Source: Oikopleura dioica (taxonomy: Eukaryota > Animalia > Chordata). Taken from it: a stretch of DNA of 64,000 nucleotides. How positions within the stretch are numbered: the first letter of the stretch is position 1; every line of letters begins with the position of its first letter. The stretch covers positions 7,130,001 to 7,194,000 of the forward strand of contig OU015566.1 in the NCBI GenBank assembly GCA_907165135.1, in the 5' to 3' direction. The notes beneath the pieces are model-generated. The model searched no databases. It had not been told where the DNA came from and saw only the letters and a program-made list of their open reading frames with translations. A program made the position numbers and the translations under genes. Below, piece by piece: positions 1-8,940 of this stretch.

Positions 1-591
1 GGGGTAAAACTTCCGACCGGCCTCTACGTTGGCTTCACAAGTGCTACTGGAGATTTGACAGACAATCACGACGTTGTTTCGTTTAAAATTTGGCAGCTGG
101 ATTCAAAGACTGATGCTGGACAGAGACACGATATGAAACCTGAAGTGCTCAATCTTGCGCCGAAAGAAGCTGTCAAAGGTCAGATTTGAGTTTATTTTAG
201 CAGTAGATTTGAAAGCAAACGGCTTCCTATGGGACTAAAAATAACTCCTGCAGATGTTTCATTTTCGAAATCATAAAAATGTAAATTTTTCCATTCGGAA
301 TTCGAATTTTAGATCAATTTCATTCTCATAATGACGAAAATCTTATTTGAGCTGATTTTATATCACAAAATCGAACCACCATTGACCTTATTCAACCCCC
401 TTGACCTAAATCTCCGAACAATCTTCAGAATAAACCAGCCCGGCTATTTATTTACCCCCTTTTCAGACAAATCATCCTCCGGTGGAGGCTGGGGCTTCAT
501 CACATTCCTCCTGATCCTGGTTATCGGTGGCGGAGTTGGCTTCTACTACTACCAAGAACGAGAAAAAGCATCTGCCAAGCGCTTTTATTAA
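1..591 (+). CDS. LMAN2: 3' end of an L-type lectin cargo receptor (VIP36/LMAN2 family); exons <1-178 and 467-591
   Basis: Frame 1 reads GVKLPTGLYVGFTSATGDLTDNHDVVSFKIWQLD, the L-type lectin sugar-binding loop. A GT-AG intron (179-466) joins it in frame to a TM helix and the C-terminal KRFY* tail typical of LMAN2/LMAN2L. Confidence 0.9.
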
Positions 592-741
592 TTTTAGACT
601 TTTGATAAAAACAATTGATTGAACACCAAAACCTTCATTTTCCTATCTTGTGAAACTGCTTCTTTCAACAACCTGTAACTAAAGCCAAACTGTATCCCAT
701 TCATGTTCCTTATTTAGAATTCTATTTTTTATCATTCTCAG

Positions 742-1182
742 AAATGCTCAAAACAAGCTAAAGCGAAAAGTTACACTTACGAATATCTACCAACATCCCC
801 AGAGGTCGACCCTTACGCCCTTAAAACATCGTTCAATCATAATGATATCCTCACAATTGCTACTCGAGTCAATAATCTTTTAGATGATTCCTTACAAATG
901 AGATATCCTAAAAATTTTCAAGAAGAACTGGTCGATTTTTCTAGGCTAGCCAAATCTATGGCGGGCAAATTCTATCGTTAGGGTTTTGGAAAAATCAGAG
1001 ATCGTGAATGCTCTCAAAAGCCAATCAAACCGACCGTTTTCTTTAATTTGGCCACCATTGACCTACTGGGTTCAGAAATTCCTCCCCTCATTGTGCAATA
1101 CCTGCCTTTTAGTACCAAAAAAAGTTCACAAACCAAAAAATTATCGATTCAAAAATTAAATATGCTCTCAAGTGTCTTTTAA
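742..1182 (+). pseudogene. Possible coding relic: 147-codon frame with one internal TAG (979-981)
   Basis: The frame starts after a TTCTCAG acceptor-like site and reads KCSKQAKAKSYTYEYLP...AGKFYR*GFGKIRDREC...NLATIDLLGSEIPPLIVQYLPF...SSVF*. No family recognised. Confidence 0.3.
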
Positions 1183-1357
1183 TTCTCTATCGATTCTAGT
1201 TAAAATTTTTATACCGACTGTGTTTATTAACAATAGCAATAGTATGTGACAGTAACATTAGCGCGTAATTCTTACTGTAGTGTGGTGAGACCTTCAACAA
1301 CCAAATAAATTCGAAAAAATGCCAATTTTCTCTTGTAAAAAAGTTTTATTTTTGAGG

Positions 1358-3241
1358 ATGACGGATGAGTCGCGACGCTCGTTCCTCAGACAGTTGCAGG
1401 AGCATCCTGATCGTATGATATTATCGGAGTTGATCCTCAAGCGAATGCCGATGGACGCGCTTGCATGGCTCGCTCCGAATGTTTTGGAGGGCGTCAACGA
1501 ACAAGGCGACTGTCGTTTCGATGATCTGGCGGGCTTTGATTTCTGTCAGACGTTTCTCAATCAGCACTACAAACGCGATTCAATTCTCGAGCTCGTCGGG
1601 AAAGAATTTGAAGCAGAGAAAAAGTCAAAGCCGGATCGGCTCTCTGATGTGATGAAGATTGTACAGAAGCGCCATGATTTGAAGTACAACAAGAAAAAGC
1701 TTGAGCCGAAGGCGACGATTGAGTTCGATTCTACTGATCCTGTCGTAAGATTTGCTGGATCATATGTAAGAGAACGCTTCTTGCCGTTTTGATTTAGTCG
1801 ATTCTTTTAGCTATTTACCGGCAAAAAATGCAAGCCGAAAGGACTTGACTTGCAAGCAGCTCGAAGCAATCTTCTCCTTTTCAATATTAACCGAGAAAAT
1901 GACGATCGTTTGCCGAAATTTCAACTTGTCGACTATTCGCCACTGGATCGGCGCCATCATCCTGACCGGCATGCGTTCCGTCCTGTTCATCAATCCGCGT
2001 TTAATCCTGCCGCTGGTGGTATTTTCCTCGACTCAGTTGTTCTTGGACAATCATTCATGGACAGAGTCTTTAGGGTCCACAGCGTTACGACAGGTGTAAA
2101 ATGTTTTCAAGATTAGTAATTTAATAAACTAATTGTTTAGATGTCCTCGAAGACAAAAAGGTTATGTTGGAGGATGAAACTTTCGAGGATATGGAATTTA
2201 ACTACTCTCGTCAACGTTGTTGGCGAGATTATGTAACGAATCCTGAAGAAAGTCTTCATCCGATGATTCAGCGTCCTCAATACGACCCCGACCTCGCAAA
2301 CTCCCCAGAAGAAGCAGAAGTAATAGAAAAGAGAGCAATGGAAAATAAAAATAATCCATTTGAGAAAGCGGTCATTGACTTCTATCGTTTCTCTGGTGAC
2401 AAGCAAGAGGTTGCCTGGAGTTTCGATTTCAGCCTCCTGAAAGATAAATACGATGATATTTATGCAAGATTTATCGATGAAGGTCAATGGTTCATTGTTG
2501 CATCTTCGGAGGATGAAAGTTTGCCGACGAAAGTGTACCACTGTGACTTACAAAAGAAAGAAGTCAATCAATTTTCCTTCCCCGAAAATGAAGATTCAAT
2601 GAACTACAACTTCTCAATGAGATTTTTCGGAATCTACAAAGGCCTCATCTACTATTCAAGAGTCGTAGAAGTCTCTGATGAGGAGTGGGGGTCGCACGAC
2701 AGATTTCTTTTTGGATACTTGAAGAAAGAAAGCAGAAAGCGCCATTTTGATGCTGATGAATGTGATGACGCTCTAAATGAAAGGATTGATATTTTATGGC
2801 TGATAACTTATCGGTTTTTGCCTAAAATAGGGTTTCTCTTAAATTTAGACTCAGAATATTTCTTTTATCCTCAAAAAGGTGAATCTCTGCTTTCTGGAAT
2901 ATCGAAGTGATACGCAGCTCCATGTTGAAGTAAAAATAGGTGCCAACGGCTTCGTTCACTTTGCTTTGGTTCCGCCGAAAGTCTACACCTTTTCCATCGA
3001 AGACATCAAAAAGAAGATTCCAAAAGCTGAAAAACGATCCAGGAAGATTGATCAGAATGACACCGAAGAAATTACCCTGCCATGCATCAACCTCCGTAAG
3101 ATGTTTTTCCTTATCTCTCTCTCTCAAGAAGTTTCAGAGGACTTTTGCATTCCAAAATACCGAGATCTGAGTGAGAATCTTCTTCCTTGGCAATCCGATG
3201 TTGGATACGTCGAAGGCAAAAAGTTCCATCTTCTTGTGTAA
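1358..3241 (+). CDS. Unknown multi-exon protein, tandem paralogue copy 1; N-terminus weakly F-box-like
   Basis: ATG at 1358 (MTDESRRSFLRQLQEHPDRMILSELILKRMPMDALAWL). GT-AG introns join ORFs 1319-1792, 1850-2116, 2164-2910 and 2879-3241, ending ...GYVEGKKFHLLV*. The junction at about 2790-2880 is unresolved. Confidence 0.7.
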
Positions 3242-3488
3242 AGCTCCCAGTTTACTACTGGTGCCCAAAGAAAGTCCATCTTCTTCAAAAGTTTGGAATC
3301 TCAAACCGACCATTTTTCTGCCTCTTTTATTGAAACCAAATGAAGTTTTTTTCTCATATTCTCCGACATAAAAATGACATTTTCTGCTCTACCCTGCCGT
3401 TCCTGACTTTTTCATTGGTCATTATATACGAATTGTCGTTGAGATAAATAAGTGGAGATCTTTCGTAAATAATGTTTAATTTTTGAGG

Positions 3489-5546
3489 ATGACGGATGAG
3501 TCGCGACGCTCGTTCCTCAGACAGTTGCAGGAGCATCCTGATCGTATGATATTATCGGAGTTGATCCTCAAGCGAATGCCGATGGATGCGCTTGCATGGC
3601 TCGCTCCAAATGTTTTGGAGGACGTCAACGAAGAAGGCGACTGTCGTTTCGATGATCTGGCGGGCTTTGATTTCTGTCAGACGTTTCTCAATCGTCACTA
3701 CAAACGCGATTCAATTCTCGAGCTCGTCGGGAAAGAATTTGAAGCAGAGAAAAAGTCAAAGCCGGATCGGCTCTCTGATGTGATGAAGATTGTACAGAAG
3801 CGCCATGACTTGAAGTACAACAAGAAAAAGCTCGAGCCAAAGGCGACGATTGAGTTCAAACGTTCGAAATTAGACGTCAGATTCTCATCATCATATGTAA
3901 GAAAGATTCAATCTTTTGTGATGATGTGTCGCTTTTAGCTTTTTACTGGCCAATATTTCAAGCCACAAGGATTGGACTTACGAGCAGCTCGAGGCAATCT
4001 TCTCCTGTTCAAAATCAATCGAAATAATGAAGAATGCTTGCCGAAGTTGGACCTTGTTGACTATCGCCCAGGAGATGAGCATCACTTTCCCAGGAGGAGA
4101 CCATTCACGCCGCTTTATCGCTCCGCTTTCAATCCTTGCACTGATGGTGTTTTCCTCGATGACGTTGTTCTTGGAAAACCACACCAAGAAAGATTGTTTA
4201 GGGTGTCTAGCGTTACGACCGGTAAATATTCAGTCATCTATTAAACTGATTCTTACTCCATTGAATTCTTTAGATGTTCTGAAAGATAGACGCGTCATGT
4301 CGGATAACATGGGAGGTCTAGATGGTAGATTCAAACGTATGGAATTTAACTTCTCTCGGCAGCGGGCTTGGAGAGATTATGTCTCAAATCCGGAAGAGAG
4401 TCTACATCCGATGATCCGGTGTAATCGAACGGGTCCAGTGCGAGCTAACTCCCCGGAAGCAATAGAAATGGAAAGACAAGCAGAAGAAGAAGAGAAAAAT
4501 CCGTTCCAAAAAACGGTCATTGATTTCTATCGGTTCTCCGGCGACAACGAAGAGGTTGCTTGGAGCTTCGATTTCACCCTACCAAAAGATAAACAATACT
4601 ACGAGTTTAATATGGAAGCAAGATTTATTGATCAATGTCATTGGTTGATTACTGCAAGATCGTCGCTGAAGAGATCGCTCGTTGAAGAGGACGACGATGA
4701 TGAAGATGAAGAAAACGACGAAGATTCACCGGATTTTTCTCAACCGCCTAATTTAGTCTATCACTGTGATTTGAAATCAAAAGAAGCCACCCTTTATTCG
4801 TTCCCTGAGGACGAAGATTTATTCAACGAAGATTTATTCAACAGAAATTTCGGAGTCTTCAAGGGTGAGGTCTACTACACAAGGGACATAGACGGCGCTA
4901 AATATTCCCGTGCGTTTGGAACCTTGAAGAAAAAAGCAGAAAAAGACGCCTCGATACAGAAGAATCTGATGATCCCCTAAATGAAAGGTTAACGAAATTC
5001 TTGTAAAGCTTTAATAAGTAAATAGAAATTATATGTTTCTTAAAGATAGATTTCATTCTTCCGAAGCAGTCCAAACATTTCCTTAACCTTTTGAAAAGAA
5101 TGATCTGTGCTTCTTTGAATATCCGAAGCTCAAAGATCTCAAGGTACGGTTTAAACTTGGCAGCAATGGGTTCGTCCATCTTGTCTTGCTTTCGGACGAC
5201 GATTCTCGTTTTTATGAGTTTTTATGTAAGTTTACACCCGAGCTCATCCGTCATGTCGGTGAGCCGTATGAAGGAACTGTCGAGATCTATACTTTCACCA
5301 TCGACAACATCAAAGAAAAGATTTTATCATCTGAAAAACGATCGAAAATCAACAAAGATGGCACTCAAGAAAAAACATTGCCAGTAGTATGCCTAGGTAT
5401 CGAGCATTTCATCACTCTTTATTAATAAAATATAAAATTTAGAGGACTTCCGCATTCCAAAATACCAAGATTCGCGCGAAAATCTACTTCCTTGGCAATC
5501 CGATATTGGATACGTCGAAGGCAAGAAGTTTCATCTTCTTGTCTGA
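3489..5546 (+). CDS. Unknown multi-exon protein, tandem paralogue copy 2, with an apparent -1 frameshift in the A-run at 4930-4935
   Basis: Same exon layout and start as copy 1, ending ...GYVEGKKFHLLV* at 5546. Against copy 1 (AAG AAA GAA AGC AGA), copy 2 lacks one base in the A6 run. Confidence 0.65.
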
Positions 5547-5789
5547 ACAATTTCACAGTTTACAATTGCAAGTTACTGCCTAAGAGCGTCCACCTCTACT
5601 TCAGAATCTACCTTGAGTGTTTTCCTGCTATTTTTATTGAAACTAGATGCACTATTTTACTCACATTCTCCGACATAAAAATGACATATTCTGCTCTACC
5701 CTGCCGTTCCTGACTTTTTTACTGGTCATTTTATTCAAATTGTCGTTGAGATAAGTAAGTGGAGATTATTGGAAATTTTCAGAGATAAA

Positions 5790-6809
5790 ATGTCGAGCTG
5801 TAAGTTTATCGCAATGACGAGCGGCAAATGTCCGGGAATTTGGAGCTTTTCGGAGTTTCAAATGCAGATTATGATGGAAGAGGATGAGGGAGACATGTAA
5901 GTTTCGCCTTTTTTGAGGAACCTTGGTTTTCTTTGGGAGTGAGAGCCTCACCTTAAAATTAAGGGGACAGTGGAAGTACTTCAAAACACGAGAGGAAGCT
6001 CGGGATCATCTTTATAAGCACAAAATCCCAGGTAAAATTCCTACCGAAGAGTCTCTCTTCAAAATCTCATTTTAGCGCTGTACGAAGATGGCGAAGCAAT
6101 CGAAGCATATCCACTCAATCGTTTCGCAGACCCAGTCAAAGGATTGCCGGTATGAAACGGCAATCGATAGCTCAAACTCATGAACCTGATTTAGACTGAC
6201 ACATTCTACGAAGGACGCGACAATCGAACTTGGATTTTGGATGACGAAGGCTCTCACGTGGTTTACTGCTCGATCATCAAGAAGGACGAAGAATATGGAC
6301 TCGGGTTGCACTGGGGAAACGACCTTGAAATAGCGCTACCGATTCATTCTATTCACGCAAACAGATCTATGGACGCACTTATTGCAGAGGTCATCGGGGT
6401 TGAGGTAAAACTACAGCTGAATTATTTTGCAAATACCGATGAAAAAATTTAGGGCGCTTTGCGAGATTCCCTACGTCTTGGCAAAAATCGCGTCACTGTT
6501 CGATGCGATTCCGAGCACGCAGTAACCAAATTGAACAAAGAACTCCAGCTGGGTGTCCAGTTCACAGGAGAATTGGGCAACTACAGAAACGGGAACTTTG
6601 GACGAAAAGTGGCGCCGGAATGGTATGAAGTTTTGAAGCTAGCGAACGCGCTGATGAGCTTGAAGATCGAACGCGTCGACAATACCGACAAGAATTATCA
6701 CCGAGCGCGCAAGCTGGCTCACGAAGGAAGGCAGATGATGAAGGTCTCGCTCGACAGAGTCCACAAGACTCAAACCAGACCAAAACGAAACAACAAAAAC
6801 AAGAACTAG
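5790..6809 (+). CDS. RNase H1-like protein (hybrid-binding domain plus RNase H fold), predicted catalytically dead; 5 exons, 271 aa
   Basis: Exons 5790-5896, 5964-6031, 6076-6149, 6195-6404 and 6453-6809 are joined by GT-AG introns of 67, 44, 45 and 48 nt into one frame. HBD-like segments: KFIAMTSGKCPGIW and WKYFKTREEARDHL. RNase H-like segments: VVYCSII..YGLGLHWG, LIAEVIG, VTVRCDSEHAV, NYHRARKLAHEG. Confidence 0.8.
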
Positions 6810-7182
6810 ACCTGTTCTCTTTCTAGCTCACATTTTTACATTCACGGCAAAGAACCTATTTTATCTAACTTTTTTATTTCACTCTTGCTTATTCCAAAAA
6901 CTGCTGAAAACAGTATCACCTCACCGCCTAGGCCTATCTTCACTGAAATTTTTATCGTAAATAAATAATTATCTAATAGATAAAATTAACAGAAAAGAAG
7001 ACAGCTTTTTTGTTTTGTTTTCAATATATTTTGGTATCTTTGGAGCAATTACTGTAGGAGGCAGGTTTTACTGTACAGTGGCCGAATTTCGAGATCATAA
7101 TACGCGTAAAAGGAAAAATAATGAGCAAGGATATTTTCATATTTCAGTTTTACAAAGAACTTAATTTGAAGAATTACAAGTA

Positions 7183-7569
7183 CAGTCGGAGTCCAAAATA
7201 AGGGACTTTTTTTGCTCCAAAATTTTCGAAAAAAGTCCCTTAAATTGGGTCATCAAAGCAAAAAATATGTCGCTGCCAAATTTTTTCTAAGTATATTTTA
7301 TGCGGCAAAATAAGCTAAAGTCATTGTTTTTGTGGTTTTCATGGCATTTTTGAAAGAGGAAACCATATACTGAAAGGCAAATCACTTCAGTTTGCGGCAA
7401 AACTGGTTAAAATCAAGGTTAATGATACCATTTATCGGCTCTCAACTAACCGAAAAGGCAAACTTATCTCAGAAAGTCCCTTAAATTGGATTTTTTTCTG
7501 CCGCTGATTTTCGGCATTTTGAGCCAAAAAGTCCCTTATCTTGGTGTCCCTTATTTTGGACTCCGACTG
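7183..7569. mobile_element. Tc1/mariner-type MITE, 387 bp
   Basis: Perfect 23-bp TIRs (CAGTCGGAGTCCAAAATAAGGGA at 7183-7205, complement at 7547-7569), flanked by TA on both sides. No ORF. Confidence 0.85.
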
Positions 7570-7618: not shown

Positions 7619-8940
7619 TTAACCGATGATGACCATTGTCGTTGGCTTGGTGGCACGGAAGTCGACGGTGAAATGATTGTCGATGATTTCAGAGAGCACT
7701 TTCTTGAATTTTCCGGGCGTCTTGTGAGTTGTGCGGCGGGAGAAATCGTATTTTAAGAAGGCATACGACTCATCGACTTCGCAAAGGGGATCAAACAGCT
7801 TCCATGCCTAGAAAAATGTTTGAAATTGGGGTTCTAGAGCTTTTAGCTTACCTTTCGTCGAGTACAGACGGTATGAACGAGGTCTTTGATGAACGGAAAC
7901 TCCTGTCGAAGCATTGCCTTTGTTGGTCCTTCTGCCATGGGTTCTATAAATTTCATCAATCTTTCGAAAGTTAGGTTTTTCATTTACCAGGAAGATGTTC
8001 GTCTAATCCAGTGATCTGATGATTTGGTAGTCCCTCGCTCAGAAGATGTTGGTAGTGGTCTTCGTGGAAGACAAGGATGACATTTCTTGCGACCTTGGTC
8101 AATGATGATTTTTAAATTCGAAGGAAAAGATGAGAATTTACCTCGCCGAATTGAGGCTCATTGACTGCCGCCGTAATATCGCGAAGGAGAAGAGCACGGG
8201 ACTGTGTGAATTCCTTGGGATCGAAATCGACGATATCATTAACATTGATGCTTTTCTCGGGCTCGGGAGAGAAAAATTGATTGATGAATGCCTAAACGAG
8301 CCCTTTCCTGTAAGGATCGGCGACAGACGACTGGAGAATGATCCTCATTTTGACCAGCTGATTTGTTTGCTCGCCTTTCTCATCATTTCGGTAGAAGAAG
8401 ATTTCGAAGAAAGGATTCCAGTAGATTTGGCCGTAGTGCTCGCGATAGAATTGCCCTTTTTTGCTTATCAATTTGATTTATGGAAAAAACAGCAAAAACT
8501 TCTATGAAAAATCATCGGAAACAAAATTACTCATCAAAATTTGTTTGATAAGCATTCCTTTGTGGACAGGACCGAAGAAGAACTGATGCCCGTTTGGAGT
8601 CACGTAGCTCGGCATTGTCATATCTCTGGTAACTTCATCCATCTTTCTTCCTTGATATTTCTTCTCTAAAAACGCAAATTTACGAATGAAACATTCTACC
8701 GAAAGAGTTGTTTTCAAACCTCCCGCGCCGCAACAGCGCCACTAGCTGACTGATAATCAGTGGAAACTCGGTGGTTCAGAAATAGAATGCGATAATCTCT
8801 TCCTTACCTTCTCAAAATGGTCAAGTTGGCGATCATCGAAATGAGAAACTTCCCACCGAAGCAGATTCTTTTATACCGACTTCGATAAATCCAGATTGAA
8901 ATATTTTGGTGTTGAGTTTTTCAACCTCGTCACGAGATAA
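7619..8940 (-). CDS. Unknown multi-exon protein; 5' end uncertain
   Basis: Minus-strand GT-AG introns join ...QFYREHYGQIYWNPFFEIFF..., AFINQFFSPEPEK..., VARNVILVFHEDHY..., EPMAEGPTKAML... and AWKLFDPLCE...TMVIIG* (TAA at 7619-7621). No family recognised. Confidence 0.6.

What the first reader, a model, noticed from the sequence alone, without database searches (positions are those of the whole stretch)
5790..6809. Complete RNase H1 architecture lacking two catalytic aspartates: candidate RNA:DNA-hybrid reader
Seen: five exons with canonical 44-67-nt introns splice into an intact 271-aa frame that the ORF track only shows in pieces. It has an N-terminal hybrid-binding-like domain (FIAMTSGKCPGIW...WKYFKTREEARDHL, compare RNase H1 FYAVRRGRKTGVF...FKKFATEDEAWAF) and an RNase H fold. 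Known: RNase H1 uses a D-E-D-D tetrad (human D145, E186, D210, D274). By eye E186 (IAEV) and D210 (RCDS) are kept, but D145 reads VVYCS instead of VVYTD and D274 reads HRARKLA instead of EEADRLA. Inference: an intact pseudoenzyme that may bind R-loops or hybrids without cutting them, like engineered dead RNase H1. I do not recall such a natural paralogue being described.
Basis: partly seen in the sequence, partly recalled or inferred. Interest (0 to 1): 0.8.

Follow-up and report, generated by a model that had tools for sequence, protein, structure and literature searches.

The report
Catalytically disarmed RNase H1-like gene
This small sea animal (Oikopleura) has an expressed, well-conserved gene shaped like RNase H1, the enzyme that cuts RNA paired with DNA, but two of its four cutting residues are gone, so it probably does not cut by the normal chemistry and may only bind.

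Summary
Window 5790-6809 (+) is a five-exon gene with GT-AG introns of 67, 44, 45 and 48 nt, encoding 271 aa. Transcript contigs confirm splicing, and orthologue mRNAs carry the Oikopleura spliced leader 0-22 nt before the ATG.

Mapping onto E. coli RNase HI across nine sequences:
- D10 becomes C/S/A.
- E48 is E, D or Q.
- D70 is invariant D.
- H124 becomes T.
- D134 becomes an invariant R.

Substrate-contact Asn and Trp residues are also absent. Purifying selection is strong (dN 0.059, dS saturated). The most conserved block is the remodelled former active site.

My verdict is a conserved RNase H1-derived pseudoenzyme. A role as a hybrid "reader" is plausible but untested. Unchecked scan notes place a canonical RNASEH1 and a different pseudo-RNase H1 elsewhere in this genome; the scan had not noted this locus on other DNA.

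The parts
5776..5789 (+). Putative spliced-leader acceptor (ttttcag, AG at 5781-5782) and a 7-nt 5' UTR before the ATG
   Evidence: Inferred. Reads of the sister lineage end at 5789 with the last 20 nt of the O. dioica SL plus a 10-nt UTR. The SL sequence is confirmed in PMC6883708. All orthologue transcripts carry the SL 0-22 nt before the ATG.
5790..5896 (+). Exon 1 (aa 1-35 and part of codon 36): first half of the HBD-like domain (KFIAMTSGKCPGIW, helix, acidic insert)
   Evidence: The RNA reads cover it.
5897..5963 (+). Intron 1, 67 nt, GTAAGT..AG
   Evidence: In sister-lineage reads, exon-2-like sequence follows directly after 5896 (loose ends).
5964..6031 (+). Exon 2 (to aa 58): second half of the HBD-like domain (W39-K40-x-F42, helix TREEARDHLYK)
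   Evidence: ESM Atlas structure match of residues 1-62 to Cauli_VI proteins, TM 0.71.
6032..6075 (+). Intron 2, 44 nt, GT..AG
   Evidence: Colinear with the Norwegian genomic locus L005.
6076..6149 (+). Exon 3 (aa 59-83): conserved connection segment (ALYxxG...EYPxNxF)
   Evidence: 19 of 46 connection residues are invariant.
6150..6194 (+). Intron 3, 45 nt, GT..AG
   Evidence: Two metatranscriptome contigs of run X1, 95-99% identical to the window, skip it exactly.
6195..6404 (+). Exon 4 (aa 84-153): pre-beta1 hairpin, strands beta1-beta3 and the start of helix A of the RNase H fold
   Evidence: AlphaFold model of P0013:80-262 and hhalign mapping. X1 contig record 3 covers 6204-6405.
6267..6272 (+). 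Codons C108-S109, at the place of the first catalytic Asp (E. coli D10, human D145); S/C/A in relatives
   Evidence: hhalign, family table and the ranges of the VIA alignment to human RNase H1.
6387..6389 (+). Codon E148, at the place of the catalytic Glu (E. coli E48, human E186); E in O. dioica, D or Q in other lineages
   Evidence: hmmsearch and hhalign mapping and family table.
6405..6452 (+). Intron 4, 48 nt, GT..AG, in frame but ending in a TAG stop; its position just before GALRD is shared with other lineages
   Evidence: Read-through products P0001 and P0014 break at the same point.
6453..6809 (+). Exon 5 (aa 154-271 plus stop): helix A, beta4, helix B, variable loop, helix D, beta5, helix E and a basic tail
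   Evidence: X1 contig record 4 covers 6572-6786.
6507..6509 (+). Codon D172, the only invariant member of the former tetrad (E. coli D70, human D210), at the end of beta4
6681..6737 (+). Most conserved block of the protein (aa 230-248, NTDKNYHRARKLAHEGRQM; 15 of 19 residues invariant). It covers the former His loop (T231 at the H124 site) and the start of helix E (R239 at the site of D134 / human D274, codon 6708-6710).

Best explanation
This is a real, expressed Oikopleura gene encoding a protein that descends from animal RNase H1 and keeps its layout. That layout is an N-terminal hybrid-binding-like domain, a connection segment that is unusually well conserved here, and a type-1 RNase H fold.

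The two-metal active site has been taken apart:
- The first Asp, which bridges both metal ions in canonical enzymes, is Cys/Ser here and S/C/A across relatives.
- The fourth Asp is an invariant Arg.
- The loop His is Thr.
- The Glu drifts between E, D and Q.
- Only the third Asp stays invariant.

The Asn pair before the Glu and the Trp residues of the basic protrusion, which hold the substrate in canonical enzymes, are also missing. The protein therefore most likely cannot cut RNA:DNA hybrids by RNase H chemistry. This step is inferred (about 0.8).

Because selection is strong and is strongest on the remodelled former active site (TDKNYHRARKLAHEGR), that surface still does something. My best guess (about 0.35-0.4) is non-cutting binding of a nucleic-acid duplex, either RNA:DNA hybrid or dsRNA. 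In this reading the HBD-like domain provides the grip, and the basic cluster H236/R237/R239/K240 takes the place of the metal ions at a backbone phosphate.

No mitochondrial presequence is possible, because the spliced leader joins 0-22 nt before the ATG. The protein would therefore act in the nucleus or cytosol.

The overall confidence of 0.6 combines three parts: identity as an RNase H1 derivative (about 0.9), loss of canonical catalysis (about 0.8), and a binder role (about 0.35-0.4).
For: - Gene model and expression.
- Sequence-level support is weak but consistent. RVT_3 is hit by 5 of 9 members (best E 0.002). A profile-profile alignment to 13 canonical RNase HI sequences gives P 5e-4 over the whole domain.
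- Residue mapping and family conservation.
- HBD: Atlas structure TM 0.71 to Cauli_VI proteins, and the nearest feature clusters are all Cauli_VI. W39-K40-x-F42 is invariant.
- Selection: dN 0.059 against saturated dS, and 110 synonymous against 24 nonsynonymous codon changes between two O. dioica lineages.
- Engineered single Asp-to-Asn RNase H1 proteins bind hybrids without cutting (PMC7657459). This shows the principle only.
Against: - No binding or cleavage data exist.
- The HBD is not detected by Pfam or by a PDB profile search. It also carries an acidic insert (DEDGDEDE-type) between helix A and strand 3.
- Canonical substrate-contact residues of the catalytic domain are not kept, so hybrid binding by that domain is not implied.
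- I could not read model coordinates, so the geometry of the former active site is inferred from alignment and secondary structure only.
- The structure was predicted for the 91%-identical orthologue, not for the window's own spliced protein, which has no reference.
Confidence: 0.6

Rival explanations
1. The fold has been reused as a protein-protein adaptor or regulator, with no nucleic-acid binding at all. It might, for example, partner or compete with the canonical RNase H1 or with another protein.
For: Canonical substrate-contact residues are lost. The HBD has an acidic insert. The connection segment is conserved like a structured interface, with 19 of 46 residues invariant.
Against: The invariant W-K-x-F of the HBD and an invariant basic cluster at the former active site look more like a phosphate-binding surface than a protein interface.
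Confidence: 0.2
2. It is still an enzyme. Either it is a nuclease using a non-canonical set of residues (D172, E/D148, D232), or it has a rebuilt centre made of C108, H236 and D172 (a metal site or a Cys-His-Asp-type triad).
For: D172, D232 and H236 are invariant and C108 is nearly so; in P0005 it is Ser with Cys next to it. This block is the most conserved part of the protein. PDB holds a type-1 RNase H with a rearranged active-site motif (4ibn, listed).
Against: The residue at the D10 site varies (S/C/A), and the residue at the E48 site is Gln in three lineages. An invariant Arg sits where a metal ligand should be. No coordinates were available to check distances.
Confidence: 0.12
3. It does not descend from the animal RNASEH1 gene. 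Instead it is a domesticated retroelement RNase H, or a gene transferred from a bacterium or giant virus.
Against: The best structural matches are human, chordate and arthropod RNase H1, and only these extend over the pre-beta1 hairpin. An HBD is not a retroelement feature. The gene has spliceosomal introns, SL trans-splicing and conserved synteny between two O. dioica lineages.
Confidence: 0.05
4. It is a decaying gene copy that evolves neutrally.
For: Catalytic residues are lost.
Against: The frame is intact in nine lineages. dN is 0.059 against saturated dS, and 79 of 271 residues are invariant at 44-50% overall identity. The transcripts are spliced, SL-capped and polyadenylated.
Confidence: 0.01

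Closest known systems
Eukaryotic RNase H1 (human RNASEH1; PDB 2QK9, 6VRD, 8SWC)
   Different: The first and fourth Asp and the loop His are replaced, and the Glu is not conserved. The Asn pair and the Trp residues of the basic protrusion are missing. The connection is conserved instead of variable. There is no presequence. Pfam RNase_H and Cauli_VI models do not detect it.
Engineered catalytically dead RNase H1 (human D210N, Drosophila D252N) used as an R-loop probe
   Same: An RNase H1 scaffold without cutting activity.
   Different: The engineered proteins change one residue and keep every substrate contact. Here the whole substrate groove has diverged, so binding must be shown rather than assumed.
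Natural inactive RNase H folds: the connection/tether domain of retroviral reverse transcriptase, the Prp8 RNase H-like domain, and slicer-dead Argonautes (from my own knowledge, not tested here)
   Same: An RNase H-type fold kept for binding or scaffolding after loss of the carboxylates.
   Different: None of these has the RNase H1 architecture with an HBD. They belong to other branches of the RNase H-like superfamily.
Pfam RVT_3 (PF13456) RNase H-like domains
   Same: It is the only Pfam model with repeated, though sub-threshold, hits: 5 of 9 members, covering helix A to helix B.
   Different: Scores of 15-17 bits are below the 21.6-bit cut-off. RVT_3 proteins are mostly derived from plant retroelements.

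Membership tests
Eukaryotic RNase H1 | Type-1 RNase H fold (five-stranded sheet with helices A, B, D and E in canonical order) | tested here: met
Eukaryotic RNase H1 | N-terminal hybrid-binding domain (Pfam Cauli_VI, PF01693) | tested here: inconclusive
   No Pfam hit at E up to 10 and no PDB hit with a profile of the domain. However, the ESM Atlas model of residues 1-62 matches Cauli_VI proteins (TM 0.71 over 58 residues) and the nearest feature clusters are Cauli_VI. The motif and the helix positions fit. On balance the domain is probably present.
Eukaryotic RNase H1 | Catalytic Asp-Glu-Asp-Asp tetrad (human D145, E186, D210, D274) | tested here: not met
   The four sites read S109 (or C108), E148 (E/D/Q in the family), D172 and R239 (invariant).
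Eukaryotic RNase H1 | Match to Pfam RNase_H (PF00075) above the gathering score | tested here: not met
   There is no PF00075 hit in any of nine members, only sub-threshold RVT_3. NCBIfam archaeal RNase HI models score only E about 0.1 in single members.
Eukaryotic RNase H1 | Substrate-contact residues (Asn pair before the Glu; Trp residues and basic residues of the protrusion) | tested here: not met
Eukaryotic RNase H1 | Cleavage of the RNA strand of RNA:DNA hybrids | not testable with these tools
   This needs a biochemical assay.
Non-catalytic hybrid or duplex binder ('reader') | Specific affinity for RNA:DNA hybrids or dsRNA without cleavage | not testable with these tools
   Only indirect evidence exists: the invariant W39-K40-x-F42 and the basic cluster at the former active site.

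The most novel reading that the evidence does not exclude
This is a natural, non-cutting reader of R-loops or RNA:DNA hybrids. An invariant Arg/Lys/His cluster has replaced the metal ions of RNase H1 and clamps the backbone phosphate. It would be one member of an Oikopleura-specific expansion of hybrid-binding-domain proteins; unchecked scan notes list HBD-OGG1, HBD-RPA-like, an HBD-only gene and a second pseudo-RNase H1. A bolder variant, at about 0.07, is that C108, H236 and D172 form a new metal or catalytic centre.
Probability: 0.3. Interest if true: 0.75.

Novelty: new variant of a known kind. Interest (0 to 1): 0.58.

Why it matters
RNase H1 is the standard enzyme for removing R-loops, and laboratories use engineered dead versions of it as R-loop probes. 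A naturally disarmed RNase H1 kept by selection across at least eight Oikopleura lineages would show that evolution has made use of the same scaffold without its cutting activity.

It would also offer a natural starting point for studying how cells sense nucleic-acid duplexes rather than destroy them. Oikopleura has a very compact, fast-evolving genome that has lost several DNA-repair pathways, so an altered set of hybrid-handling proteins there would be of interest. If the protein turns out to have no nucleic-acid role, it is still a clean example of a pseudoenzyme whose former active site is its most conserved part.

Tried and rejected
- Pfam and PDB sequence searches on single exons found nothing relevant. 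In one search the exon 3 piece was given in the wrong frame (6076-6147 instead of 6078-6149).
- BLASTP of the spliced protein against E. coli RNase HI was not significant.
- phmmer of exon 5 against 1.84 billion representative proteins found only three family members and one chance repeat protein, and no canonical RNase H.
- PDB searches with P0002, with the family profile and with the N-terminal profile gave only chance hits.
- hhalign of the first family profile against the single E. coli sequence aligned only 12 columns around D70.
- The first AlphaFold run, on full-length P0010 with 7 sequences, had pLDDT 45. It was replaced by the domain-only run.
- The metagenome DNA scan added only variants of known members.
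- The word search with the HBD region found only the query itself.
- Paper searches for Oikopleura plus RNase H1, and for RNase H1 plus pseudoenzyme, found nothing relevant.
- The window has no second copy of the gene and no canonical RNase H.
- I did not type the 271-aa spliced protein into any tool, because it has no reference. Family scans, folds and Atlas searches therefore used P0013 (91% identical) or the exon pieces.

Full report
**Observation**

Reading window 5400-7200 and splicing five exons gives an intact 816-nt frame of 271 aa. The exons are 5790-5896, 5964-6031, 6076-6149, 6195-6404 and 6453-6809. The four introns are 67, 44, 45 and 48 nt, all GT..AG. The mechanical ORF list shows the frame only in pieces.

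**The gene is real and expressed**

A phmmer search with exon 5 against 1.84 billion representative proteins found three relatives. Word searches with one of them then gave a family of full-length proteins of 264-279 aa. These lie on contigs of about 1 kb from marine metatranscriptomes and RNA runs, without introns.

The window protein aligns with them from end to end at 44-50% identity, so every exon junction produces conserved sequence. P0013 is the unnamed protein of the Norwegian O. dioica reference genome. It is 91% identical to the window protein and lies in conserved synteny with the same intron positions.

Reads laid on the window gave two kinds of evidence:
- Contigs of a marine metatranscriptome, 95-99% identical to the window, skip intron 3 exactly.
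- Three poly-A RNA runs labelled with the species come from the other lineage (under 90% alike). They cover the exons only. Their loose ends show exon 1 joined to exon 2 and exon 3 joined to exon 4.

The 5' loose end consists of the last 20 nt of the O. dioica spliced leader plus a 10-nt UTR. The leader sequence is given in PMC6883708. Every orthologue transcript contig that reaches the 5' end begins with this leader 0-22 nt before the ATG. This fixes the start codon, shows that all these lineages are Oikopleura-type animals, and leaves no room for a mitochondrial presequence.

**What the protein is**

Sequence methods barely see it:
- Pfam finds nothing on exon pieces.
- Only sub-threshold RVT_3 appears, in 5 of 9 family members.
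- NCBIfam gives E of about 0.1 to archaeal RNase HI in single members.
- PDB sequence and profile searches find nothing.

Structure decides the matter. A full-length AlphaFold run with a 7-sequence alignment was poor (pLDDT 45), yet it already had the RNase H order of elements and only RNase H hits. A domain-only run of P0013:80-262 with 13 rows reached pLDDT 74 and pTM 0.71.

Its matches were as follows:
- The nine best Foldseek matches are all the human RNase H1 catalytic domain, with E as low as 4.6e-8. There are 279 matches at E <= 0.001.
- In the ESM Atlas the best shape matches are arthropod and chordate RNase H1 clusters (TM 0.69 and 0.66). Only these extend over the hairpin that precedes beta1.
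- The Atlas's own model of P0013 gives the same answer, TM 0.71 to chordate RNase H1.

This points to descent from the animal RNASEH1 gene rather than from a retroelement or a microbe.

For the N-terminus the evidence is weaker. There is no Pfam or PDB sequence hit. However, the Atlas model of residues 1-62 matches Cauli_VI proteins (TM 0.71 over 58 residues), and the nearest feature clusters are all Cauli_VI. The motif pattern also fits the hybrid-binding domain: strand, G-K/R-x-P-G, helix, W-K-x-F, helix. I rate the HBD assignment at about 0.8.

**Active site**

I built a profile of 13 canonical RNase HI proteins, E. coli plus 12 phage enzymes fetched by tblastn. hmmsearch aligns helix A to beta4 of every family member in the same register. 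hhalign of the two profiles aligns window 106-253 with E. coli 7-146 (P 5e-4). Combining this with the family alignment and the ranges of the structural alignment to human RNase H1 gives the mapping below.

| Canonical site (E. coli / human) | Window residue | Across the family |
|---|---|---|
| D10 / D145 | C108-S109 | S, C or A |
| E48 / E186 | E148 | E in O. dioica, D in four lineages, Q in three |
| D70 / D210 | D172 | invariant |
| H124 / H264 | T231 | invariant T |
| D134 / D274 | R239 | invariant R |

The Asn pair before the Glu aligns with Ala-Leu. The basic protrusion is a variable loop without Trp and with low confidence. Canonical two-metal catalysis needs the first Asp, which bridges both ions (established knowledge of RNase H). 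I therefore rate loss of RNase H activity at about 0.8.

**Selection**

Between the window and the Norwegian lineage the coding sequence is 80.3% identical. There are 110 codons with synonymous-only changes against 24 nonsynonymous ones, dN is 0.059, and dS is saturated. Across nine sequences, 79 of 271 residues are invariant.

Conservation is highest in residues 230-248 (15 of 19 invariant, NTDKNYHRARKLAHEGRQM). This is the former His loop and the start of helix E. The connection segment, which is variable in canonical RNase H1, has 19 of 46 residues invariant. This is a functional protein whose former active-site surface matters.

**Mechanism**

- Shown: an RNase H1-type fold, an altered tetrad, expression, and purifying selection.
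- Inferred: no RNase H cleavage.
- Best guess (0.35-0.4): binding of a nucleic-acid duplex without cutting. The HBD-like domain would contribute through the invariant W39, K40 and F42. The basic cluster H236/R237/R239/K240 would take the place of the metals.
- Against this guess: the lost substrate contacts and an acidic insert in the HBD.

Rivals are a pure protein-protein adaptor (0.2), a re-invented enzyme centre such as C108-H236-D172 or D172/D232 (0.12), foreign or retroelement origin (0.05) and neutral decay (0.01, refuted). I could not read model coordinates, so the geometry of the site is untested.

**Orthologue or paralogue**

The protein searches were exhausted before I could look for a canonical O. 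dioica RNase H1, and the window holds none. Unchecked first-reader notes of this scan list several items on other pieces of the same genome:
- an 'HBD-only paralog directly upstream of RNASEH1' (s1-348327);
- another 'pseudo-RNase H1 with all four catalytic residues replaced and a mitochondrial-type presequence' (s1-404031);
- an HBD fused to OGG1 (s1-378114);
- an HBD fused to an RPA-like OB segment (s1-331840).

If these hold, this gene is a paralogue within a lineage-specific expansion of HBD proteins. I did not test them.

**Novelty**

The held paper library has no paper that joins Oikopleura with RNase H1, or RNase H1 with pseudoenzyme. Public records call P0013 'unnamed' or 'uncharacterized', and one JGI orthologue is auto-named 'ribonuclease HI'. 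Dead RNase H folds are known in other contexts, and engineered dead RNase H1 is a standard tool (PMC7657459). A naturally disarmed, conserved RNase H1-architecture protein appears to be undescribed, so I class it as a new variant of a known kind.

**Limits**

- The window's own spliced protein has no reference, so I did not type it into tools. Folds, Atlas searches and full-length family scans used P0013 (91% identical) or other family members. Alignments with the window protein were made in scripts.
- The family alignment is shallow (nine lineages).
- The residue mapping rests on profile alignment, secondary structure and alignment ranges, not on inspected coordinates.

Noticed in passing
window 1156-5546: This stretch of about 4.4 kb lies between the lectin-type gene (window 1-1155) and the RNase H1-like gene. 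It has no counterpart in the Norwegian O. dioica reference (L005). It holds two tandem copies of one unnamed multi-exon gene (ORFs 1319-3241 and 3483-5546), with no Pfam hit.
   Followed up: partly
L007-L019 (transcript contigs of the orthologues): All contigs begin with the 3' part, or in L011 the full 40 nt, of the O. dioica spliced leader, 0-22 nt before the ATG. The leader is identical in at least seven divergent lineages whose proteins are only 44-79% identical.
   Followed up: yes
window 5790-6809 against L007 and runs X8-X10: RNA runs labelled with the same species are under 90% identical to the window. The coding sequence is 80.3% identical to the Norwegian lineage with saturated synonymous sites, which fits deeply split cryptic lineages under one species name.
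   Followed up: partly
L002, L004 and the products P0001, P0011, P0014: Intron positions differ between lineages; for example, the P0002 lineage has an intron after about residue 11. The intron just before GALRD (window intron 4) is shared, so there is intron turnover within one small gene.
   Followed up: partly
window 7646-8618 (- strand): A gene conserved with the 235-aa minus-strand gene downstream of the orthologue in the Norwegian genome (L005 4428-5353). No family is assigned to it.
   Followed up: no
other pieces of the same genome (scan notes): Unchecked first-reader notes list an HBD-only gene next to RNASEH1, a second pseudo-RNase H1 with a presequence, an HBD-OGG1 fusion and an HBD-RPA-like protein. 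Together they hint at an expanded hybrid-binding-domain family in this animal.
   Followed up: no
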